DNA of 63,953 nucleotides, filler included, from Octopus bimaculoides (Eukaryota), in the NCBI RefSeq assembly GCF_001194135.2. It is 7 parts of 6 records of this genome, joined end to end, with 100 filler letters (N's around TTAATTAATTAA, not from the genome) between each part and the next. Parts side by side here need not be neighbours in the genome. Positions count along the whole stretch, not along the records: positions 20,433 to 37,857 come from NC_068997.1; 6 more parts are not named here. The stretch is one strand, 5' to 3'. Positions 19,990-35,829 of the stretch are shown here, in pieces (the first letter of the stretch is position 1; every line of letters begins with the position of its first letter). The notes beneath the pieces were generated by a model. It was not told where the DNA came from. It did not search any database and saw nothing but the letters and a program-made list of their open reading frames with translations. The position numbers and the translations under genes were made by a program.

Positions 19990-20007
<18 letters not shown>

Positions 20008-20332
20008 CATTCTTTTATTACATTACTTACATTATTTACATTATTTACATTTGACGGATATTTGTCCTCATCTTGTTTGTTGTTAACACAACGTTTCGGC
20101 TGATATACCCTCCAGCCTTCGTCAGGTGTCTTCGTCAGCTGTGGTAGGTTATACAAAGGCGAAACATGTTGCCCCCTCAAAATAAGGGTAGAAGAACATC
20201 GCAAAGCTGTGACACGAGGAGATATTGATAAATCGGGTATAGCTGATCATGTATGGCAAAATGGAGACCACATCCCCCTGTGGGATGAAGTTAAAATGAT
20301 AGGCAGCGAACAACACTGGAAAATACGAAAAC
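19990..20332 (+). mobile_element. Penelope-like element: inverted pseudo-LTR (about 19990-20131, -) fused to a GIY-YIG endonuclease fragment (about 20137-20332, +)
   Basis: SCGRLYKGETCCPLKIRVEEHRKAVTRGDIDKSGIADHVWQNGDHIPLWDEVKMIGSEQHWKIRK is the C-terminal half of a PLE GIY-YIG domain. The upstream segment carries a hammerhead on the opposite strand. The 3' end falls in a gap. Confidence 0.85.
20085..20130 (-). ncRNA. Minimal type I hammerhead ribozyme (Penelope-type)
   Basis: 5'-GACAC CUGACGA A GGCUG gaggguauau CAGCC GAAAC GUU GUGUU-3'. 5-bp stem I, CUGANGA and GAAA core, 5-bp stem II, palindromic loopless stem III (AACGUU), cleavage triplet GUU. Confidence 0.8.
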
Positions 20333-20432: not shown

Positions 20433-20762
20433 ACCACCAGATAAGGGATCGGGGGACCCTGTCAAAGGCTTTCTCCATGTCAACGAAAGCCAGGTACAGA
20501 GGTTTATCCTTAGCTAGGTATTTCTCCTGCAACTGTCTCACTAGAAATAAGGCATCATTAGTGCTTTTACCTGGCACGAACCCAAACTGCATCTCATCTA
20601 AATTGATTCGCTCCCTAATTAGTTGGGCTATGACCCTCTCTGTAACTTTCATAACCTGATCTAACAGCTTGATGCCTCTGTAATTATTTGTATCTAAAGC
20701 GTCACCTTTACCTTTGTAGCAGTTGACTATGATGCTGCTACACCAGTCATTGGGTATGACTA
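20433..20762 (-). mobile_element. RTE LINE reverse-transcriptase fragment
   Basis: VIPNDWCSSIIVNCYKGKGDALDTNNYRGIKLLDQVMKV...LYLAFVDMEKAFDRVPRSLIWW, nearly identical to part of 26724-27725. Confidence 0.95.
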
Positions 20763-20847
20763 TGTACATATATGTCTGTGTATATGCATATACATATATA
20801 TTATTTATATTATATGATTGAATGCCATGCATCCATTTCCAAGTAAG

Positions 20848-20881
<34 letters not shown>

Positions 20882-21434
20882 AAAGAAAAGGATAAAGAGA
20901 CCAATGGCAAAGTTAGAATTATATTTTATGGATAAAGTCTTAAAGCTGTTTCAGGGAAAATCCAATGTATCCCTTCATCGGAGACGGTAATAGTAGAAGA
21001 ATGGATTATTACATCTATAAGAGCAGAGTTGTAGTAGGAAGTGAGAGCGATGCGTAGAAGAAAGAACAAATAAGAAAAGTACTTGGAGTATAGTTCCATT
21101 CCAACAGTAAACATCCATGTAAAGAATCCTTGTGGGTATTTTCCGGAGATAATTGTAGTAGCAAAGGTGGATATATATCATATCTTATCCGGAGTACTCT
21201 GTGCATTGTTTACTCAAAGGATAGCCCAAATCAAGTGATATATATATATATATGTGTGTGTGCATAAACACACACACACATATATTACTCCACCATCCCC
21301 GGTTTGTGGCCTTCTAATTGTAATCCTATGGATTACTATGTGTGAGGTGTGGTTGAGAAAGACACCAACTGCTCTGCCTGCAACACCACAGCTGAGCTGG
21401 TGACCAAGGTCAAGAAGGGATCTTTTTTAAAACG

Positions 21435-21756
21435 GGGGCCACATTTTTCATTAACGAAACACTTTGAAACTTGGAACACTGGTAGAATGTGTCATATAAA
21501 ACATCTTTTTCTCTTAGTCTTCTTTAAAAAAAAAGAAATCCATAAATTATTCCATGTTAAAGTTGTCGTATTTCTGTAATTTCAACCAATCACTGACGTC
21601 CATTCAGCCGACATACATTAAGTGCCGACTACATAAACAAACGATTCTGAAACAATTAATCCTAACCCTAACCCTAGGGTTAGGGTTAGGGTTAAAGCAA
21701 ATTTAAAATGAAAAAAGCAAATAAAACGAAGAATCGTTTGTTTATGTGGTCGGCAC
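21435..21756. mobile_element. MITE/foldback family member with an internal telomeric-repeat palindrome
   Basis: 21445-21610 matches the reverse complement of 59265-59450. 27-bp inverted repeats at 21622-21648 and 21730-21756 (1 mismatch) flank (CCCTAA)n(TTAGGG)n at 21656-21695. Confidence 0.65.
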
Positions 21757-22182
21757 NNNNNNNNNNNNNNNNNNNNNNNNNNNNNNNNNNNNNNNNNNNN
21801 NNNNNNNNNNNNNNNNNNNNNNNNNNNNNNNNNNNNNNNNNNNNNNNNNNNNNNNNNNNNNNNNNNNNNNNNNNNNNNNNNNNNNNNNNNNNNNNNNNNN
21901 NNNNNNNNNNNNNNNNNNNNNNNNNNNNNNNNNNNNNNNNNNNCTTGGAAGGAACAGTGGATTAGGAATCACCTATAGTGTATGAACAGATGCTTCACTT
22001 TATTGGCATTTTATTTTGGTAACAAATATTTGCAAGCATTCCTTTTAACAAAAGAGTTTCTTTGTACTTCAGTATATATGTATATCTTTTTCTTCTTTTT
22101 ATTTAGTGGCATTCTTTCTAGAAAGTGGGAGTTGGTTTCTAACAAAGAAATATATATGTATGCATGCATATGTATGTATGTA

Positions 22183-22860: not shown

Positions 22861-22931
22861 ACATTTAGTGAAGATGACTGGTTCTGTGGAGCATTACTGA
22901 AGTTTTTTCTTTTTCTTAGAATTATATATAT

Positions 22932-23331
22932 ATAAAGTGTAGTATGTTGCCACTTAAGTGTGGCTGACCCCTAGGGGTGGATGTTACTGTTGCTTTTAGC
23001 CCCAGGAGGACATCTCCTCCAGCTGGCTTATCGACACACGACTGTGTCCTGTTTGCCAAGGGAAGTTATCCCTCTCACCTCGATCTGCAGCACGAACGTA
23101 TCCGGATTTCAGGGTCATCAGCTGTCGGACGCCGACGAAGGGAAATAACCCTGAAATCCGGATACGTTCGTGCTGCAGATCGAGGTGAGAGGGATAACTT
23201 CCCTTGGCAAACAGGACACAGTCGTGTGTCGATAAGCCAGCTGGAGGAGATGTCCTCCTGGGGCTAAAAGCAACAGTAACATCCACCCCTAGGGGTCAGC
23301 CACACTTAAGTGGCAACATACTACACTTTAT
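22932..23331. mobile_element. Foldback element with 184-bp arms and 32-bp spacer; probable tail-to-tail Penelope-type pLTR insertion
   Basis: 22932-23115 is the reverse complement of 23148-23331 with no mismatch seen; the mirrored 96-aa ORFs in the track agree. The spacer plus the start of the right arm form a hammerhead fold. Confidence 0.85.
23119..23175 (+). ncRNA. Type I hammerhead-like ribozyme with variant core (U4C)
   Basis: CAGC ugu CGGACG | CCGACGA | AGGG aaauaa CCCU | GAAA UCCGGA UA | CGUUCG u GCUG. Stem I is 6 bp plus 4 bp beyond an internal loop, stem II is 4 bp, stem III is palindromic (AUCCGGAU), triplet AUA. Confidence 0.6.
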
Positions 23332-23402
23332 CGTGCAGTTACTGTTAATACTTCATTTAGAGAATTAACATTGCTTATATATATATATATATATATGTAT
23401 AT

Positions 23403-23403
<1 letters not shown>

Positions 23404-23462
<59 letters not shown>

Positions 23463-24469: not shown

Positions 24470-25129
24470 CCCAGTTTTGGAAACCTGCTACAGTGTCTGC
24501 AATTCCCTGCCTACCATTGTCCTATTCCATTCACTCCCAACACCTCAAAGGGATGGAGACAACTGTTAACAACACTGAATCCCTCTCCCTCCTTTATGGT
24601 CACAGGTGTGTCTTTTGTAAAGCCAGATCTACTGGAAGTCTACTTCCTTATATCCCTAACCAGTGAGCCGTCACCCTCAAGAATTTGGGGAAATCCATGT
24701 CATTGCATTTGACATCAGGGAATCAGTCAGCTATATCTGCCTGTGGGCTCCATTTGTCTTTTGGATCAATGTCTTCATATCAGAAGCACCATCAAAGTGT
24801 GTGCTGATGGAGCTCTTTCTGATCCACAGCATATCAATTCTGGTGTGACCAAGGTTCGGTACTGTTATAAGGTCAGTACATTGCTTAAACTGAGCTAATC
24901 AGTGAAGATATATTTCATTGGCTGCATGAATAATAACTAAAGCAAATTCACGAACATTTACTAGAAATATTTATTGTTGGATGTAAAGATATTTGATGTT
25001 GGCTATTTACAATGAACAAGGTTAGTAACTGCCAACAAGGATGGAGAGAAAAATCATGCCACAGTCATAGAAGTTTCTTATGAAACATTGTGTAAATGTT
25101 CAGTTCAATCTGTCCAAAAACCTAGAGTT
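24470..25129 (+). mobile_element. Ancient CR1/L2-like (Jockey-group) LINE RT remnant
   Basis: Frameshifted RT motifs ..ESLSLLYGH..FCKARSTG.., ..KNFGEIHVIAFDI.., ..IKVCADGALSDPQHINSGV.QGS. Its downstream part recurs at about 31115-31160 and 31410-31680. Confidence 0.6.
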
Positions 25130-28100
25130 CATCATCATCATCATCATTTAACGTCCACTTTCCATGCTAGTGTGGGGTGGATGATTTGACTGGGGACTGG
25201 CAAACCGGATGGCTACACCAGACTCCAATTTGATCTACAGCTGGATGCCCTTCCTAATGCCAAACACTCCAAGAGTGTGGTGAGTGCTTTTTGTGTGCCA
25301 CCGGCACATGGGCCAGTCCGGCAGTACTGACAATGGCCACGCTCAAATGGTGTTTTTACGTGCCACCTACACAGGAGTTAGTCCAAAGTTTTGTTTACAT
25401 GCCACCGGCACAAGTGCCAGTAAGGTGAAGCTGGAAACGATCGTGCTCAAATGGTGCTTTTTACGTGCCACTGGCACGGGAGCGAGACCACTGCTCTGGC
25501 AGTGATCCCACTCAGATGGTGCTGTTAGCGCTCCACTGGCACGGGTGCCATTCATCAAAATTGGTTCAGTTTTGATCTCGCTTGCCCCAACAGGTCTTCA
25601 CAAACTGAGTTTAGTGTCCAATGAGGGAAGTTTAGCATGTGTGCCAATCATCAAATTTGGTTCGATTTCAATTTTGATTTCACTTGCCTCAACAGGTCTT
25701 CGGAAGCAGGATTTTGTGTCCAAAGAAGGAAAGGTACGCATAGTGGGCTGGTTACACCCCTGGTGAAGGCCACAGGTTATGGTCTCACTTGGCTTGCCGA
25801 GTCTTTTCATGCACAGCATATTTCCAAAGGTCTTGGTCACTAGCCATTGCCTCAGTGAGGCCTAATGTTCGAAGGTCGTGCTTCACCACCTCATCCCCAG
25901 TACTCCTGGGTCTACCTCTTCCACAGGTTCACTTTTTCACACAGCTATCCTCATCCATTCTTGCCAAGTGACCATACCACCGCAATCGTCTGTCTTGCAC
26001 ACCACAACTGATGCTTCTTAAGTCCAACTTTTCCGTCAAGGTACTTACACTCTATCGAGTATGCACACTGACATTACACATACATCGGAGCATACTGACT
26101 TCATTCCTTGTGAGCTTACGCATCTCCTCAGCAGTCACGGCCCATGTTTCACTGCCATATAGCATGGCTGATCATACACATGCATCATACAGTCTGCTTT
26201 TTACTCTGAGTGAGAGGCCCTTTGTCACCAGCAGAGGTAAGAGTTCTCTGAACTTTGCCCAGGCTATTCTTATTCTAGCAGCTACACTTTGAGCGCACCG
26301 TCCCCCACTACTGACTTGGTCATCTAGGTAATGGAAGCTATCAACTACTTCTAGTTTTTCTCCCTGGAATGTGGCAGAAGTTGTTCTCTGCATATTTTCA
26401 GTGTTTATAGCTCCTGAGCATCTGCCACATACAAAAATTATCTTGCTAGTTAGCCTTCCTTTGATAATGCTGCACTTATGTGTCCATAGCTTACACTGAG
26501 TACATCTTATAGAGTTTCTACCTATGCCTTTTCTACAAATTGAGCAGGGCCATCTACCTGAAGGGGTTTGTGGTTTGTCTACCTTCCTACTTATTAGGAC
26601 TTTGGTTTTAGCTAGATTGACTCTAAGGCCCTTTGATTCTAATCCTTGCTTCCACACATGAAACTTCTCTAGTTCTGATAGTGACTCAGCAATTAGAGCA
26701 AGTTCATCAACATAGAGAAGCTCTCAGGAGCATTCTGTCTTGAATTCCTGTGTTATTGCCTGTAGGACTATTATAAATAGGAGGGAGCTGAGGACTGAAC
26801 CTTGGTGGACGCCTACCTCTACCCAGAATTCTTCACTGTACTCGTTGTCAACCCTCACTTTACTGACAGCATCCCTGTACATAGCTCTCACTAACCATTC
26901 TTCTATCCCTAGTTTCCTCATTGACCACCAGATAAGGGATCGGGGAACCCTGTCAAAGGCTTTCTCCATGTCAACGAAAGCCAGGTACAGAGGTTTATCT
27001 TTGGCTAGGTATTTCTCCTGCAGCTGTCTTACCAGAAATATAGCATCAGTGGTGCATTTCCCTGGCACGAATCCCAACTGCATCTCATATAAGCTGACTC
27101 TCTCCCTAATTAGTTGGGCTATGACCCTCCCCATGACCTTCATTACCTGGTCCAACAACTTGATACCTCTGTAATTATTTGTGTCTAAAGCGTCACCTTT
27201 ACCTTTGTAGCAGTTGACTATGGTGCTGCTACACCAGTCATTGGGTATGACTCCTTCATGCATCACCTGGTTAACTATACGGGTGACTAGTCTATAGCCG
27301 ACATTGCCAGATATTTTGAGCATCTCTGCATAGATTACTGATGGGCCGTGGGCTTTCCCTGTCTTCATACTCTTGATTGCTTTATCTACCAAAGTACTGT
27401 CAATTAGGATAGCTGATCCCTCTGTTGGGTCGACATTCGGCAGACTCGCTTTCTCCCATTCACTCTCTTTATTAAGCAACCTTTCATAGTGGCGTCTCCA
27501 AACCTCTTTCTTTGCAGCCTCGTTTAGTGCAAGTGAGCCATCATCCATGCGAACACATTTCTCTCCTACGACATCACAATTCTCTCTCACATACTGTCTT
27601 GCAACACAAAATACTTCAAGTCTTTGGTCCTCATGGCGCAGAACATTGGCAAAGTTTTTCTTATCTGCTTCCCCTCTGGCTAAGTAAACCTGTCTCCTAG
27701 CTTCCCTTCTGGCAGTCTGATACAATTCCCTGCTACCTCCGTTCTTCCAGTCCTTCCAAGCTTGTTTNNNNNNNNNNNNNNNNNNNNNNNNNNNNNNNNN
27801 NNNNNNNNNNNNNNNNNNNNNNNNNNNNNNNNNNNNACCATCACGTTACTTTGGGTCAAGAGGGGACTTTGCACCATCCATAGATCTGGTCAATGGCTCT
27901 CAGCAGGTTGTCCCATAGAAACCTCCAGTTGTCTTCCACATTATGTGATGCTATATCCCCTTCTATTTCATCGAAGGCTTTGAGTAACACGTCTCTAAAT
28001 CTCTGTTCATTTGCAGGAACTTTAAGCTTCCAGAGCCTTCTCGTCCAAGCTGGTCTACTTCTGGGCATCCTGATCCCGAAGTTGCTAACGACTAATCTGT

Positions 28101-28422
28101 GTTGAAGGGTACATTCTTCGCCTGGGAAGGTTTTGCCATTTATAAGCAGTCCTCTTTCCCTTTTTCTGGTGAGGAAGTAGTCAATTTGGCTAGTGTGTTT
28201 GCCAGAATGGTAAGTAACTAAGTGACAGGCAGGTTTTCTGAAGTTGGTATTGCAAACCATAAGATCATTTGCATCACAGAACTTCAACAGTCTGGTTCCC
28301 TCCTCATTGCAGGGACCAAAGCCATAGCCTCCATGTACGCCATGGAAGCCCCCTGCATGTTGTCCAACATGCCCATTGAAATCACCAGTCACAAAGAGAA
28401 GGTCCCTGTCATTCGGTGCAAA
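25130..28422 (-). mobile_element. 5'-truncated RTE-clade LINE (APE fragment, RT, PHD-like insert, 3' UTR, (GAT)n tail)
   Basis: 27856-28420 APE (GDFNGHVG, SQIDY, QHRLVV). 26724-27725 RT (NYRGIKLL, FVDMEKAFDRV, GVHQGSVLS). Degenerate YVDE at about 26710. 26172-26657 C-terminal RT. (CAT)n at 25130-25147. Confidence 0.95.
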
Positions 28423-28974
28423 TGTCCAGAACCTGAAGTTGTCTGTGGAAATGTCCAATCTGCATGGCAAGAGTAGAGACACATTTCAGTCAGCTGTTTC
28501 CAATATTTCCAGTGAGTTAAATTGCCAAAACAGTTTTTATAGGGTACTAGAGGTTTTATTCTACAACAATCAAGAAAACACCACAACCTCACACTGATTG
28601 ATCGATTTATAGACTGATCACATGAAACTATAGTTCACTTGTAGTGTCTGACCAGTTGAGTGGTTAGGATTTGAATCACCACTACAAGTAGTCTCCTCCC
28701 AGTTCTTTATGTGAATGTGAAAAGAACAGAATAATAAAACAGAGAATTTACATAAAAATACAATAGGTCAACACATGCAAAAAGAATAGGAAAGAGAAAA
28801 ACATGCATTGAATACTGAATAAATACTGAAAGAATGTTCATGTAACAATGATAAGTTTGTAAAATATGCAAAGTTCTGCAGTTTTTTGTTTGTTTGTTTC
28901 CTTTTTTTAACTCTAAAAAGGAAAACATTTGTGTAAAAAAGAAAGTGAGTCTAAGCACTGATATAAAAAATGGG

Positions 28975-30400: not shown

Positions 30401-31100
30401 ACATCATTATCATCATCATTTAACGTCTGTTGTCCATGCTGGCATGGGTTGGATGGTTTGACCAGGGCTGGCAAGCTGGAAGGCTGCACCAGACTCCAGT
30501 CTGGTTTGGCATGGTTTCTACAGTTGGATGCCTTTCCTAATGCCAACCACTCCAAGAGTGTAATGGGCACTTTTATGTGTCACTGGCACGGGTTCCATTT
30601 GCATGACTCTGGTATCTGTCATGACTGTTGTTTTGCTCAGCTTAATGGGTCTTCTTCTCAAGCATAGCATGACATAATGCCAAAAGCCTTGGTCATTGCC
30701 TCCATGAGGCCAAACACTTGGAAGGAGCTCAGCCACTTTTCCTCCATGAGGCCTAATGCTCGAAAGGTGCTTTTTACATGTAACTGGCACAGGTGCCAGT
30801 TATATGACACCAGCATCAGCCACGACTATGATTTCACTTGGCTTAACGGGTCCTCTCAAGCACAGCAAATAGCCAAAGGTCTCAGTCACTGGTCATTACC
30901 TCCATGAGGCCTAAAGTTTGAAGATAATGCTTCACCACCTCGTCCCATGTCTTCCTGAGTCTACCTCTATTACAGGTTCCCCCTACAGTTAGAGATCGGC
31001 ACTTCTTTACACAGCTGTCCTCGTTCATATGCATCACATGACCATACCAGTGCAGTTGTCTCTCTTGCACACCACATCTGATGCCCCTTATTCCCAACTA
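30400..31100 (-). mobile_element. RTE LINE 3' fragment
   Basis: GIRGIRCGVQERQLHWYGHVMHMNEDSCVKKC..GRLRKTWDEVVK, plus a 3' UTR and (GAT)n tail like 25130-26000. Confidence 0.9.
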
Positions 31101-31164
31101 TTCTCTCAAGAAATATAGATATATTTCATTGGCTGTATGGGTTGGTTAGATATATTTTATTGGC

Positions 31165-31410
31165 TGCATGGCTGTATGGTTTGACCAGGACTGGTAAGCT
31201 GGAAGGCTGCACCAGACTCCAGTCTGATTTGGCATGGTTTCTACGGCTGGATGCCCTTCCTAACATCAACCACTCCATGAGTGTAATGGGTGCTTTTATG
31301 TGCCACCTGCATAGGTGCCATTTGCATGACACCAGTATCTGCCACGACTGTCATTTTGCTCAGCTTAATGGGTCTTCTTCTCAAGCATGTCATGATGCAA
31401 AGGTCTCAAA
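31165..31410 (-). mobile_element. RTE 3' UTR fragment
   Basis: Matches 30445-30680. Confidence 0.8.
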
Positions 31411-31949
31411 CTCATGAACATTTAACTGAAATATTTATTGCTGGACATAAAGATATTTGGTGTTGGTTATTTACAATGAACAATATTAATAATTGCCAAA
31501 TGATATAGAGAGAAAAACTGCTTTGCATATATAGAAGTTACCTATGAGATATTGTGTAAATATTCAGTTTAGTCTGTTTGAGAACCTGGAATTATCTATG
31601 CAAATGTCCAAAGCCATCTGCATGGCAAAAGTGAAGGTGCATGTGAGTCAACTGCTTCCAACATTCTGTGATTAATTTGAGCACCTATAACATCAATGAC
31701 CTATTTGTTGTTATTACCAACATTGCCCATTCCTGTGCAGGCATAGCCACCATTCCTATCTAACCTGCCTCTCTCATTCATCATCCATATGTCTAATCTG
31801 TATTGACCTTATGAACAATGACAGAAAATATCCACCAATAGAATTCTACCAATCTTGTTTCCTTTGGCATCACAAAGACACAATTATTATACATATAAAG
31901 AAAACAATACTATATGCCACCTACCCTAAACATTACCAGCTCACCATGA

Positions 31950-33157: not shown

Positions 33158-33460
33158 GGCTGACTCCATGAGTAAATTAAAAACATTCCAGGCCAAATCC
33201 GGACCCACAATCCTGAAATTTTGGATTCCCAAGTTTTCATTACTGTGATTGCTTTCGGCAATTTTTTTACATGACTTTTTGCGACAAATTTTTTGTACGA
33301 TAACAATTTTTATAATTTGAAGGCTAACTCCGTGAGTAAATTAAAAACATTCCAGGCCGAATCTGGACCTGCAGTCCTGAAATTCTGGATTCCTATGTCT
33401 TCATTATTGTGATTGTTTTTGGCAATTTTTTTTACAGAATTTTTTTGTGACAAATATGAT
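33158..33460. repeat. Two-copy tandem repeat, period about 164 bp
   Basis: GGCT(G/A)ACTCC(A/G)TGAGTAAATTAAAAACATTCCAGGCC.. at 33158 and 33322. Confidence 0.8.
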
Positions 33461-33999
33461 CATCATTAGGATATGACTCTGCAGAAAGCAATTACAACAA
33501 ATTCTCCAAAACAAGTCAGAAGTCTGTCTGCAGATCTTTCCATTCAGGGTCAGTTGCCTAAAAGCTAGTAATATATAACTTAGGAATAACTAAATAAGTT
33601 GATGACAAATACACAATACAAATCCCCAAATTTGTATATACAATATACAAAAAATAGTTCTATTAGGCACCAAACACACATGTAGAAATCCATATGATTT
33701 ATACAGACACAACATATGAAATGGAGTACAAGAAAGCACTGCATACATTATGTAGGCTACTTACAAAACACAAACTGCAAACAGGACCCTGCACATACCC
33801 AAGGCATACTAAGCTATGCTTGGTTGTGCAGTGAAAGCAGACAATAAAATTAAGAATAGTGAAAAATGATTGTGGATAGATTTAGTCAATACTAATTACA
33901 GTAATAAATGATGAAGTAGTCCTCCTGATACAGGCTATCCACAAAATCCTGCAGATCCAAGATTACCCTAAATGCCACAGGAAAGTGTCCCCCCCACCA

Positions 34000-34960
34000 A
34001 CTATCATTCTCTGATCTACAGGCATGGTTCCATCAACTCTTACCTTTGAATAAATTCAATGAAGGCTACAGCTTTCTCTTTACCCTCACCTTTTTCAAGT
34101 AAAACTTGAAACGGCTAATGAGGGCTCAACCAAAGAGAAAAGTGTCTGCTTTCTCACCTTTCAACAAGCCCACCCCCACTGTCCAACAAAGGAAAATTGC
34201 CTTCCCTGCCTGGTTAAAGAAAGGTTATTGGGCATTCATCATGCTTGACTCAGCCCTAAGCCAAATCCATTCCACAAGTGGTAGCAGCTTTTTGACATAA
34301 TTTTGCAAGCCAATTGGGCTCAGACATTCAAAAAGTGCATGTAGAAAGATTTCTTGGACAGATCTCTCTGGTGGTACTTGCATGTCTAGAGTTTATCTCT
34401 CTCAGTGCAGTAGTACCCCTTGGTAGCACTACGAGACCAAAGATTTCTGGGAGTTGTCCATTGTAGGTCCTAACTCCAAACTTCTCTGGAATACCTGACA
34501 ACATTCCAGATACCAGTCCTAGTCTTTGCTTCACCCAGGACTGCTTCTCTCTCAAGGAGATTTATTGTTGAAAGACATGCTGCCCAAACAGCAACCATGT
34601 CTATTTACCATCCAGAAATCTCAGCAGATGTAGCAGCCTGAGAACATGTCCATCTCTCAGCACTCACAGCATGCCATGCAGAGGGTGCTGGCATCAAACA
34701 GACTGCCTGACCAGAAGCTATGGCAAAATAAACAAATGGTCAGGCAATAAATGATTACAACAACAATATAGGCATTCACTTTCTCAGCCCAACCATTCAA
34801 TGGTAGCTTCTTGGTTCATATTTGGAAAAGATTTGACTGCCCTGCTCATTACCTTGTCCCAGATCAGCTCATTTGGTAGCAAGGATTAAACCAAATCCCA
34901 TGCAGTTTAAGCATTCCATTAGCTCAGCACACCATGACAACATCTGACAGCAATGGACTT
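34000..34960 (-). mobile_element. Degraded Tx1/L1-clade LINE ORF2 3' part
   Basis: LKLHGIWF....KKLPLNGWAEKVNAYI, LVRQSV*CQHPLHG, HVLRLLHLLRFLDG....SLREKQSWVKQR, and a CPR...HALFEC zinc knuckle. Confidence 0.7.
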
Positions 34961-35069
34961 GCCTCTCCAGATGCCGGCTGCAAGCTAATCAACATGCCCT
35001 GGTTGATTTTAGCCCGGTTATTGTCTCCTGTTCTTCAGAATTGTGCCAGCTACTTCCATTTTTCGTATA

Positions 35070-35343
35070 TGTATTTCGTGAGTGTAAAAACAGAAACACG
35101 ACATACATAGGTGAAACGGCAAGAAGTTTGGCTGAGCGTGTAAATGAACATTGGAGGGACTATAATAATCAAAAACAAACCTCGGTGATCTACCAGCATG
35201 CCAAAGAACAACATGGTGGTGTACTGGACAGAATTAGCATAGAAATCCTGTCTAGACACCCCGGTGACGCATCGTTGCAGCAAATACAGGAGTCAGTCCT
35301 CATAACTGAAACGCAACCAATTTTGAACACCAAATACACGTAG
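35070..35343 (+). mobile_element. Penelope-like GIY-YIG endonuclease fragment
   Basis: YIGETARSLAERVNEH...SVIYQHAKEQH...IEILS....QIQESVLI...QPILN. Confidence 0.85.
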
Positions 35344-35829
35344 ATGAGGGCCTTACAATTGCCCATGGCTGCATGTGTTGTTCACACATATGATGCGGAA
35401 TATGAACGTAAATAAATAAATTTAAATTAATTTTTAAAAAAAGTCTCTATCTGATCTGATATAAACGAAATTGTTACAAACACACATATGGACGCACATA
35501 CTTACATATAAGCACGAACACATAAGTGCGTGCACACATATGAGCATGCACACATACGAGCTTGCACACACTCACATGCTCATACCGAACAGTTTCAAAA
35601 CAACGCCAGATCATATATTCAAAATAAATGGAAGTGGAGAGACAAGTTACTGAAGAGATTGCAAGAGTGCAATGAAATAATTTAACAAAAAAACTGTATA
35701 AATAAATTAATGAAGGACTGAACCAGTGCGTGTGTTTATTACCGGCATAATGCCTCTCCCAAGGTTTAATTGTACTTCCATTTTGTTGGCTTTCAACAAC
35801 ACAGCAGTGACATGTTAACACATCCCTTC

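What the first reader, a model, noticed from the sequence alone, without database searches (positions are those of the whole stretch)
22932..23331. 400-bp foldback that looks like a protein-free, tail-to-tail Penelope-type pLTR unit
The 184-bp arms match with no mismatch seen and keep their CpGs, although neighbouring DNA is decayed, so the insertion or inversion is recent. There is no transposase or RT remnant. The only unique part is a 32-bp spacer holding the 5' half of a hammerhead fold. The right half reads as ribozyme plus about 160 nt of downstream sequence, and the left arm is an inverted copy of the same 3' end. That is the geometry of PLE insertions, as at 19990-20332. I infer a small non-autonomous ribozyme-bearing retroelement (retrozyme-like or mini-PLE) rather than a DNA MITE. 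The arms also contain nested mini-palindromes (ACCCCTAGGGGT, GGAGGA..TCCTCC, GACACA..TGTGTC).
Basis: partly seen in the sequence, partly recalled or inferred. Interest (0 to 1): 0.85.

Follow-up and report, generated by a model that had tools for sequence, protein, structure and literature searches.

The report
Inverted twin hammerhead-like retroelement insertion
A perfect 400-bp hairpin in an AT-rich animal genome is most likely two truncated copies, joined back to back, of a small ribozyme-carrying jumping element of the Penelope/retrozyme kind; that is a known sort of insertion, but its ribozyme core carries one unusual base.

Summary
Two arms, 22932-23115 and 23148-23331, are exactly complementary over 184 nt around a 32-nt spacer. 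The element is richer in G+C and CpG than its flanks, and it has no coding capacity.

My first tests (Rfam, a strict descriptor) found no hammerhead. A generic scoring scan then found a type-I hammerhead-like motif at 23126-23170 (+). It has a 6-bp helix I, a 4-bp helix II with a 6-nt loop, GAAA, an 8-nt palindromic helix III (ATCCGGAT) and a UA cut site 167 nt from the arm's outer end. No shuffle or control sequence scored as high. One core base deviates: CCGACGA has C at the conserved U4, and the Rfam models do not report the motif.

The same variant (CCGAYGA-AGGG...CCCT-GAAA) recurs in a second, unrelated 359-bp element at 20879-21237 (-). That element, like this one, lies between (TA)n tracts.

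Best reading (0.55): two 5'-truncated copies of a protein-free, hammerhead-bearing Penelope-type or retrozyme-like retroelement, joined 5'-to-5' and inserted into a (TA)n microsatellite, with a possible 39-44-nt one-sided tail. A foldback MITE with a TA duplication is the main rival (0.17).

This is a known kind of insertion. No other copy could be retrieved because the source genome is not in the searchable collections.

The parts
22923..22934 (.). (TA)6 tract abutting the left arm. It is either the left part of the presumed (TA)n target or the site of a TA duplication (TA at 22933-22934, mirrored by TA at 23329-23330).
   Evidence: Sequence; list of (TA)n tracts.
22932..23115 (-). Left arm: the inverted copy (sense on the minus strand) of the 184 nt that lie 3' of hammerhead loop 2. 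It carries CCCT-GAAA-ATCCGGAT-A-CGTTCG at its inner end.
   Evidence: Exact complementarity to 23148-23331.
23115..23121 (-). Canonical CTGATGA box on the minus strand, fused directly to the left arm's CCCT-GAAA with no helix II 5' strand or loop. It is either a coincidence or the remnant of the left copy's box 1.
23116..23147 (+). The 32-nt unique spacer, read as the 5' extension of the direct (plus-sense) copy. It holds a small hairpin (GTCGG-acg-CCGAC), helix I strand a, box 1, the helix II 5' strand and loop 2.
23126..23170 (+). Type-I hammerhead-like motif:
- helix I: CGGACG (23126-31) with CGTTCG (23165-70)
- box 1: CCGACGA (23132-38), with C at U4
- helix II: AGGG with CCCT (23139-42 and 23149-52); loop AAATAA
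- GAAA: 23153-56
- palindromic helix III: ATCCGGAT (23156-63)
- predicted cut after A 23164
   Evidence: Generic hammerhead score 21. None of 1000 dinucleotide shuffles reach it, and no locus reaches 21 in about 61 kb of control sequence read on both strands. The minimum-free-energy fold of 23122-23174 keeps helices I and II. The Rfam models do not report it.
23148..23331 (+). Right arm: the direct copy from the helix II 3' strand to the outer (3') end.
23332..23375 (+). A 39-44-nt unique segment between the right arm and the next (TA)n tract. It is either a PLE-type one-sided 'tail' or host DNA (possibly the end of the mariner relic).
   Evidence: Sequence. The tail is described in PMC8557442 and PMC11167929. 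The register test against L001 gives 20/46 identities, rank 18 of 2331 offsets, but the nhmmer profile finds no mariner homology here. Unresolved.
23376..23402 (.). (TA)13 tract, the right part of the presumed (TA)n target. It is followed by T57 at 23404-23460.
   Evidence: TRF.
20879..21237 (-). Second small element of 359 bp, flanked on both sides by (TA)n (21238-21253 and 20849-20878). It carries the same variant motif: CCGATGA (20981-20975), AGGGA..TCCCT, GAAA (to 20949), and a 4-bp helix I (GTCT with AGAC).
   Evidence: There is no other similarity to the palindrome.

Best explanation
The 400-bp foldback is a single insertion made of two 5'-truncated copies of one small, protein-free, hammerhead-bearing retroelement. 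That element is the pLTR-type or retrozyme-like non-autonomous partner of Penelope-like elements.

The two copies are joined 5'-to-5', so their 3' ends face outward. The plus-sense copy (about 23116-23331, perhaps extended by a 39-44-nt tail to about 23370-23375) still contains the whole hammerhead-like motif. The minus-sense copy (23115-22932) is truncated inside the motif.

Inferred mechanism:
- A PLE-type GIY-YIG/RT enzyme supplied in trans nicked both strands of a (TA)n microsatellite.
- It primed reverse transcription of the same RNA from both nicks.
- The two incomplete cDNAs were joined with 0-3 nt of microhomology. The arms were therefore identical at birth, and they have had no time to diverge or lose CpGs.

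In this copy the ribozyme is probably inactive. It has C at core position 4, its helix III is of the dimer-only type, and its 3' half would be locked into a 184-bp perfect stem in any full-length transcript. The locus is therefore best seen as a dead-on-arrival insertion. If transcribed, it would give a long hairpin RNA.

Shown: the palindrome, the motif and its statistics, the (TA)n flanks, and the second element with the same core variant. Inferred: the RNA intermediate, priming on both strands, the tail, and the PLE enzyme as the mobiliser.
For: 1. A hammerhead-like architecture with canonical metazoan type-I dimensions lies exactly at the inner junction: helix I 6 bp, helix II 4 bp with a 6-nt A-rich loop, GAAA, a palindromic helix III and a UA cut.
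   - Score 21, against a maximum of 20 in 1000 dinucleotide shuffles.
   - The reversed piece reaches at most 19, and six other loci (forward and reversed) reach at most 20.
   - The only higher score in the piece (22) is a canonical min-hammerhead candidate about 300 nt downstream of a GIY-YIG ORF, which is a PLE 3' end.
2. The pattern CCGAYGAAGGG-N(4-24)-CCCTGAAA occurs twice in the window, and in none of 100 shuffles. The second copy sits in an unrelated 359-bp element that is also bracketed by (TA)n, and its helix I is kept by different bases.
3. The geometry matches published PLE features:
   - An inverted 5'-truncated copy, a 30-40-bp tail at one end, and microsatellite or (TA)n targets (PMC8557442).
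   - Pairs of hammerheads 100-700 bp apart on opposite strands (PMC4209133).
   - The PLE enzyme cleaves and extends both DNA strands and starts reverse transcription at two internal sites (PMC11167929).
   - Animal retrozymes are related to PLE pLTRs (bioRxiv 10.64898/2026.07.22.740005).
4. The insertion is compositionally foreign (GC 0.515 against 0.33) and keeps its CpGs.
5. (TA)6 abuts the left arm, and (TA)13 follows the right arm after 44 nt.
6. PLE remnants are present in the same 17-kb piece.
Against: - Box 1 is CCGACGA. U4 belongs to the conserved core and its uridine turn (PMC6155905; that it is essential is my recollection of mutational studies).
- The Rfam hammerhead models give no hit even at E<=10 on 63 nt. 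They also miss the PLE-adjacent candidate, so this test is weak.
- 10.1-11.1 is A-U rather than the usual G-C, and there is no bulge after A9, unlike published PLE min-hammerheads.
- There is no direct or tandem repeat, no RT/EN within 2 kb, and no similarity to the PLE fragment at 35 kb.
- No ATG-initiated ORF runs out of the 3' end, as it does in the canonical PLE studied in vitro.
- Only one copy is available.
- The 44-nt 'tail' may be host DNA.
- The scoring scheme is my own, and short dyads are generally enriched in the arms.
Confidence: 0.55

Rival explanations
1. Foldback MITE: a non-autonomous DNA transposon with 184-187-bp terminal inverted repeats and a 26-32-nt core (22935-23328). 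A Tc1/mariner-type transposase cut and pasted it into a TA dinucleotide at the edge of a (TA)n tract. The hammerhead resemblance is coincidental.
For: - Perfect long terminal inverted repeats, small size and no coding capacity.
- TA on both sides (22933-34 and 23329-30), so the inverted repeat extends 2-3 nt beyond AAGTG..CACTT exactly as a TA duplication would make it.
- After removing 396 bp, the distance between two landmarks of the flanking mariner relic equals that in the related contig L001 (48 nt). The right flank matches L001 in that register at 20/46, rank 18 of 2331.
- Tc1-like elements are known to favour TA-rich palindromic targets (my recollection).
Against: - The hammerhead-like motif at the centre, and its recurrence in a second (TA)n-flanked element, would both be coincidences.
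- The register signal comes only from the last 11 nt, and the nhmmer profile of the mariner family finds nothing to the right of the palindrome.
- The ends (AAGTGTAG...) do not resemble the inverted repeats of the adjacent mariner family.
- There are no internal direct repeats of the IR/DR type.
- G+C content of 51% is atypical for MITEs.
- No other copy was found in the piece or in any collection.
Confidence: 0.17
2. Two-step origin. A single 5'-truncated hammerhead-bearing retroelement inserted first. A later DNA-level event then produced the inverted arm: a replication template switch, foldback repair, or hairpin-primed (snap-back) second-strand synthesis.
For: - The centre of the palindrome coincides with a short self-complementary hairpin (GTCGGacgCCGAC, 23124-23136) that could nucleate a foldback.
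- The arms are perfect.
Against: - The centre is not symmetric around that hairpin: TCATCAGCT on the left against GAAGGGAAATAA on the right.
- The inverted arm ends exactly where the (TA)n target begins. Priming from the target predicts this; a later local duplication does not.
Confidence: 0.1
3. Assembly or library artefact: a chimeric inverted read, or a collapsed or consensus-corrected hairpin path in a scaffolded assembly.
For: - The piece contains an N gap (about 21750-21950), so it is a scaffolded draft.
- PLE tandem and inverted insertions are said to cause assembly problems (PMC8557442).
- Perfect arm identity is what a collapsed graph node would give.
Against: - The palindrome is internal, short and flanked by different unique sequence on each side.
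- It has a unique asymmetric spacer.
- It differs in composition from its flanks. An artefactual foldback of local DNA would mirror the flanks.
Confidence: 0.05
4. A host hairpin-RNA, miRNA or endo-siRNA locus selected for its long stem.
For: A perfect 184-bp stem. Rfam miRNA hairpin models give sub-threshold hits (mir-4637, 49.6 bits against a gathering score of 89).
Against: - The hits are generic hairpin matches below threshold.
- There is no conservation evidence.
- The locus sits among decayed transposons and is compositionally foreign.
- A stem of this length without bulges is not miRNA-like.
Confidence: 0.03

Closest known systems
Penelope-like element (PLE) insertions with an inverted 5'-truncated copy and hammerhead-bearing pLTR (Evgen'ev & Arkhipova; Cervera & de la Pena 2014, PMC4209133; Craig et al. 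2021, PMC8557442; Frangieh et al. 2024, PMC11167929)
   Same: - Inverted pair of 5'-truncated 3' ends.
- Hammerhead-type motif near the 3' end.
- AT-rich or (TA)n target.
- Possible 30-40-nt tail on one side.
- PLE remnants nearby in the same piece.
- Pairs of hammerheads 100-700 bp apart on opposite strands have been described.
   Different: - No RT or GIY-YIG ORF, and no direct pLTR.
- Box 1 has C at U4; helix II is 4 bp without the usual bulge or the G10.1-C11.1 pair.
- No ORF start runs out of the 3' end.
- No sequence similarity to the PLE fragment at 35 kb.
Metazoan non-LTR retrozymes (Cervera & de la Pena 2020, PMC7229834; Li et al. 2026 preprint)
   Same: - Protein-free unit of a few hundred nt with a type-I hammerhead of canonical helix sizes and a dimer-type palindromic helix III.
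- Present in invertebrates that also carry PLEs.
- The unit RNA is structured (z = -3.0).
   Different: - Retrozymes are defined by tandem direct repeats; here there is an inverted pair and no tandem copy.
- G+C is 51%, against the reported <45-50%.
- Circular RNA was not testable.
Foldback or Stowaway-like MITEs with a TA duplication (Tc1/mariner-mobilised)
   Same: Long perfect terminal inverted repeats, small size, no ORF, TA on both sides, insertion next to a TA-rich tract.
   Different: - Carries a hammerhead-like motif that is shared with another, non-palindromic element.
- GC-rich.
- No partner transposase with matching ends found.
- Copy number unknown.
Drosophila-type Foldback (FB) elements
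   Same: Long inverted repeats with a short middle.
   Different: FB arms are built of tandem subrepeats. None are present here.

Membership tests
Hammerhead ribozyme, type I | Core box 1 CUGANGA (C3 U4 G5 A6 N7 G8 A9) | tested here: not met
   The sequence is CCGACGA (23132-38): five of six specified bases, with C at U4. The same C4 occurs in the second element (CCGATGA).
Hammerhead ribozyme, type I | GAAA box, then U16.1-H17 cut site | tested here: met
   GAAA at 23153-56; T 23163 and A 23164, with the cut predicted after 23164.
Hammerhead ribozyme, type I | Helices I and II of canonical size closing the core; helix III short and palindromic (dimer-type) in metazoan type-I motifs | tested here: met
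   Helix I is 6 bp and helix II is 4 bp with a 6-nt loop; ATCCGGAT is a perfect 8-nt palindrome. Helices I and II appear in the minimum-free-energy fold. The canonical sizes are taken from PMC4209133.
Hammerhead ribozyme, type I | Match to curated covariance models (Rfam hammerhead families) | tested here: not met
   No hammerhead hit at E<=10 on 17 kb, 461 nt or 63 nt. The models also miss the canonical-box candidate at 35646-35686, so sensitivity for such minimal forms is low.
Hammerhead ribozyme, type I | Self-cleavage | not testable with these tools
   Needs in vitro transcription of the unit as monomer and dimer.
Penelope-like element (autonomous) | Single ORF with a telomerase-like RT and a GIY-YIG endonuclease | tested here: not met
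   No Pfam domain or homologue in the element. The nearest GIY-YIG is at 35041-35343 and is unrelated in sequence.
Penelope-like element (insertion signature) | Inverted 5'-truncated copy next to a direct copy, 3' ends outward | tested here: met
   Arms and asymmetric spacer. Orientation is set by the hammerhead-like motif.
Penelope-like element (insertion signature) | Direct pseudo-LTRs or partial tandem | tested here: not met
   No direct or tandem repeat in or around the element.
Penelope-like element (insertion signature) | Optional 30-40-bp tail at one end; AT-rich or microsatellite target; variable duplication | tested here: inconclusive
   A 39-44-nt unique segment lies on the right only, with (TA)6 to the left and (TA)13 to the right. 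The segment may instead be host DNA.
Non-LTR retrozyme | Tandem direct repeats of 150-450 bp, each with a type-I hammerhead | tested here: not met
   One complete motif and one truncated motif in inverted orientation; no tandem copy.
Non-LTR retrozyme | Expression as small circular RNA | not testable with these tools
   No RNA data available.
MITE (Tc1/mariner-type) | Terminal inverted repeats, small size, no ORF | tested here: met
MITE (Tc1/mariner-type) | TA target-site duplication | tested here: inconclusive
   TA is present at 22933-34 and 23329-30. Because TA is its own reverse complement, it cannot be told apart from a 2-nt extension of the inverted repeat.
MITE (Tc1/mariner-type) | Many copies with identical ends, and an autonomous partner with matching inverted repeats | not testable with these tools
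   No second copy in the 17-kb piece. The source genome is not in the collections: the best LINE relatives are only about 60% identical, and all DNA scans were empty or gave chance hits. The ends of the adjacent mariner relic do not match.
Foldback (FB) elements | Inverted repeats composed of tandem subrepeats | tested here: not met
   No internal direct or tandem repeats in the arm.

The most novel reading that the evidence does not exclude
The C4 core (CCGAYGA) is not a defect. It would be a lineage-specific, catalytically competent hammerhead variant that marks a family of protein-free retroelements targeting (TA)n. Two otherwise unrelated members lie in this 17-kb piece. These elements would routinely insert as perfect foldbacks, which then act as long-hairpin RNA sources against their own family.
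Probability: 0.12. Interest if true: 0.65.

Novelty: new member of a known kind. Interest (0 to 1): 0.35.

Why it matters
If the reading is right, the locus is a clean, very young example of the two-strand priming that PLE enzymes show in vitro. Both cDNA start points and the 5'-5' junction are preserved to the nucleotide in a unit small enough to rebuild and test.

The recurrence of C at the conserved position 4 of the hammerhead core in two unrelated elements is the one point a ribozyme specialist might want to test. Otherwise this is an ordinary transposon relic in a repeat-rich intergenic region.

It also carries a practical lesson. Both the curated Rfam models and a strict descriptor missed the motif.

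Tried and rejected
- Rfam at E<=10 on the piece, on 461 nt and on 63 nt gave only sub-threshold miRNA-type hairpin hits and no hammerhead.
- A strict hammerhead descriptor (exact CUGANGA, helix II, GAA) gave 0 hits in the piece. I first took this as refuting the hammerhead claim. I withdrew that after a relaxed scan found a PLE-adjacent candidate and a generic scoring scan found the central motif.
- The palindrome ORF (96 aa) has no homologue among 5.8 billion proteins and no Pfam hit.
- Exact and gapped DNA patterns from the arm and from the hammerhead were scanned in viral, metagenome and prokaryotic genome collections. They gave nothing, or one chance hit (L006, GC 62%, only the two short palindromes match).
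- Source genome. LINE RT relatives are at most 60% identical (a named one from the mollusc Elysia at 52%), so neither the genome nor a close relative is searchable. The SRA run that holds the related mariner contigs is not mentioned in the literature library.
- 'Empty site' by homology. The left flank is an internally deleted mariner relic, 74% identical to the Logan contig L001. I tried to show that the palindrome is a clean 396-bp insertion into it. The register test is suggestive, but BLAST and an nhmmer profile of three family members find no homology beyond 22896. I leave this inconclusive.
- The mariner as mobiliser: its inverted repeats do not resemble the palindrome ends.
- IR/DR-type internal direct repeats: none.
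- Literature searches for the sequence strings ACCCCTAGGGGT and CCGAUGA found nothing relevant.
- One protein search was wasted on a frame-corrected mariner translation, because the word filter found no candidates.

Full report
**Observation**

The window holds a near-perfect palindrome at the stated place. The repeat finder reports arms 22932-23118 and 23145-23331, 187 nt, 99% complementary, 26 nt apart. A base-by-base comparison shows a single mismatch at arm position 185. As single-stranded DNA the region folds at -256.8 kcal/mol, against -53.6 +/- 4.8 for shuffles (z = -42).

The element has GC 0.515 and CpG observed/expected 0.60. The 2-kb flanks have GC 0.33-0.34 and CpG observed/expected 0.40 and 0.27. 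The only ORF is a 96-aa by-product of the symmetry, with no Pfam hit and no homologue. Short dyads are enriched in the 216-nt unit: eight loci, 17 stem calls against 5.7 in shuffles. No second copy of the arm exists in the 17.4-kb piece.

**The hammerhead question, and a correction of my own first answer**

Rfam found no hammerhead at E<=10 on the piece or on the 461 nt around the element. A strict descriptor (exact CUGANGA, helix II, GAA) found nothing in the piece either. I then read how PLE hammerheads are built: minimal or dimer-type helix III, and relaxed helix sizes (PMC4209133).

- A relaxed scan found a good candidate at 35646-35686 (+). It reads GTTA-CTGAAGA-g-ATTGCA-agag-TGCAAT-GAAA-taa-TT|TAAC. 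It lies about 300 nt downstream of a GIY-YIG ORF at 35041-35343 (Pfam E = 9e-6), so it marks a PLE 3' end. Rfam misses this one too, so the Rfam negative carries little weight.
- A generic scoring scan counted core matches, helix II, GAA, A15.1, U16.1, H17 and contiguous helix I pairs, with an optional bulge and a 0-6-nt loop 3. At the centre of the palindrome it found:
  - helix I CGGACG/CGTTCG (6 bp);
  - box 1 CCGACGA;
  - helix II AGGG/CCCT with loop AAATAA;
  - GAAA;
  - the perfect 8-nt palindrome ATCCGGAT in place of helix III;
  - a cut after A 23164.
- These are the canonical sizes of metazoan type-I hammerheads: helix I 6 bp, helix II 4 bp, short palindromic helix III.
- The score is 21.
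  - None of 1000 dinucleotide shuffles reach it (maximum 20).
  - The reversed piece reaches 19. Six unrelated loci, forward and reversed, reach 20.
  - In the piece only the PLE-adjacent candidate scores higher, at 22.
- The minimum-free-energy fold of 23122-23174 keeps helices I and II.
- The flaw is one base. Box 1 has C where the conserved U4 of the uridine turn should be (PMC6155905). The 10.1-11.1 pair is A-U.

**A second element with the same variant**

The scan also picked up CCGATGA-AGGGA..TCCCT-GAAA on the minus strand at 20981-20949, with a 4-bp helix I made of different bases.

- The pattern CCGAYGAAGGG-N(4-24)-CCCTGAAA occurs exactly twice in the window, and in none of 100 shuffles.
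- This second motif sits in a 359-bp stretch (21237 to 20879, minus strand) bracketed by (TA)8 and (TA)15.
- Apart from the motif, the two elements share no sequence.

Two small, protein-free, (TA)n-flanked units with the same unusual core in 17 kb argue that the motif is a family feature and not a chance match.

**Surroundings**

- (TA)6 (22923-22934) abuts the left arm.
- To the right come 44 unique nt (23332-23375), then (TA)13 (23376-23402) and T57.
- The left flank (22376 to about 22900) is an internally deleted mariner relic.
  - It hits the Pfam family HTH_48 at E = 1e-4.
  - It is 74% identical over 509 aligned positions to the Logan contig L001. The same deletion derivative is in L002-L005.
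- I tried to use this family as an empty-site reference.
  - After removing 396 bp, two landmarks are 48 nt apart both here and in L001. The right flank matches L001 in that register at 20/46, rank 18 of 2331 offsets.
  - The signal comes from the last 11 nt only, and an nhmmer profile finds no homology beyond 22896.
  - Whether the 44 nt are host DNA or part of the insertion stays open.

**What it most likely is**

Published PLE biology describes:

- insertions that are heavily 5'-truncated;
- an inverted 5'-truncated copy often adjoining the direct copy;
- a 30-40-bp tail at one end only;
- a bias for microsatellites, including (TA)n (PMC8557442);
- pairs of hammerheads 100-700 bp apart on opposite strands;
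- an enzyme that in vitro cleaves and extends both target strands and starts reverse transcription at two internal sites, whose spacing is the tail (PMC11167929);
- animal retrozymes that are protein-free relatives of PLE pLTRs (PMC7229834 and the 2026 preprint).

The locus fits this as follows:

- a (TA)n target;
- a minus-sense copy of 184-187 nt;
- a plus-sense copy of 213-217 nt that includes the whole motif;
- a 0-3-nt junction;
- a possible 39-44-nt tail.

The 3' ends face outward, so the arrangement is 5'-to-5', not 'tail-to-tail'. Identity of the arms follows from both cDNAs copying the same RNA. The retained CpGs and the absence of substitutions in 368 nt mean the event is recent. The steps involving RNA, priming on both strands and a trans-acting PLE enzyme are inferred.

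This copy is probably inert as a ribozyme. It has C4, its helix III works only in a dimer, and the 3' half of the motif would be buried in a 184-bp stem.

**Rivals**

- A foldback MITE with a TA duplication remains possible.
  - For it: TA lies at 22933-34 and 23329-30, and the register result could be read as support.
  - Against it: both hammerhead observations would have to be coincidences, and no matching transposase ends are seen.
- A two-step origin (single insertion, then DNA-level foldback) is less economical, because the inverted arm ends exactly at the target tract.
- An assembly artefact is unlikely for a short internal palindrome with an asymmetric spacer, distinct flanks and foreign composition. 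It needs long reads to exclude.
- A host hairpin-RNA gene has nothing in its favour beyond the stem.

**Limits**

The source genome is not in any searchable collection. The best LINE RT relatives are about 60% identical, and all DNA scans were empty or gave chance hits. Copy number, variation in breakpoints, linkage to PLE ORFs and RNA evidence could therefore not be examined. The scoring scheme is mine and was applied to one genome fragment. An oddity I cannot explain is a canonical CTGATGA on the minus strand (23121-23115), fused directly to the left arm's CCCT-GAAA.

**Verdict**

This is a new member of a known kind, of modest interest. The one testable curiosity is the recurrent C4 core.

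Noticed in passing
window 20879-21237 (minus strand): A 359-bp element bracketed by (TA)8 (21238-21253) and (TA)15 (20849-20878). It carries a hammerhead-like motif with the same C4 core and helix II as the palindrome: CCGATGA AGGGA...TCCCT GAAA, with helix I GTCT/AGAC. GC is 36%. It has no other similarity to the palindrome.
   Followed up: partly
window 35041-35343 (+) and 35646-35686 (+): A 5'-truncated Penelope-like element: a GIY-YIG endonuclease ORF (Pfam E = 9e-6) ending in ...LNTKYT*, followed about 300 nt later by a canonical-box min-hammerhead candidate (CTGAAGA, bulged G, 6-bp helix II, GAAA, 4-bp helix I). Rfam does not report it. No RT motif was seen upstream in 33300-35040.
   Followed up: partly
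window 22376-~22900 (+); loci L001-L005: An internally deleted mariner relic in which the HTH N-terminus is fused directly to the C-terminal '...EFVPQGQIINREF.CDILK...' region. The same deletion derivative, 65-74% identical, occurs in Logan contigs from runs SRR11869384/85/91/94. Out-of-frame ORFs across it have been called as proteins there (P0121, P0142, P0158). It looks like a widespread non-autonomous mariner family.
   Followed up: partly
window 23115-23121 (minus strand): A perfect CTGATGA box lies on the minus strand, immediately 5' of the left arm's CCCT-GAAA-ATCCGGAT-A-CGTTCG. This is a hammerhead lacking only the helix II 5' strand and loop. Its complement, TCATCAG, sits upstream of the plus-strand motif. 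Coincidence, a remnant of a second complete motif, or an anti-box: not resolved.
   Followed up: partly
window 26172-28482 (minus strand) and 20433-20832: A non-LTR retrotransposon with an AP-endonuclease fragment, RT (RVT_1, E = 3e-18) and a weak C-terminal PHD-like hit (E about 0.009, below the Pfam cut-off). A second fragment at 20433-20761 is 90.6% identical to 26924-27252. The best database relatives are only about 50-60% identical, including one from the mollusc Elysia chlorotica.
   Followed up: partly
window 23404-23460: An uninterrupted run of 57 T directly after (TA)13. On the minus strand this would be the poly(A) tail of a retroposon whose body lies to the right (23461 onward). That body was not identified.
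   Followed up: no
window ~21750-21950: A run of N (an assembly gap), so the piece comes from a scaffolded draft. This is relevant to the artefact rival.
   Followed up: no
window 30442-30672 vs 31166-31395; 24943-25315 vs 30402-30589 and 31170-31593; 25778-26040 vs 30827-31110: Several 72-87% identical dispersed repeats of an unidentified family. ORF fragments such as '...GLTRAGKLEGCTRLQSGLAWFLQLDAFPN...' recur.
   Followed up: no
locus L006 3962-4016 (metagenome contig Ga0209093_1000846): A GC-rich (62%) contig matches the two short palindromes ACCCCTAGGGGTGGA and CCAGGAGGACA.GTCCTCC at similar spacing but nothing else. Taken as a chance hit.
   Followed up: yes
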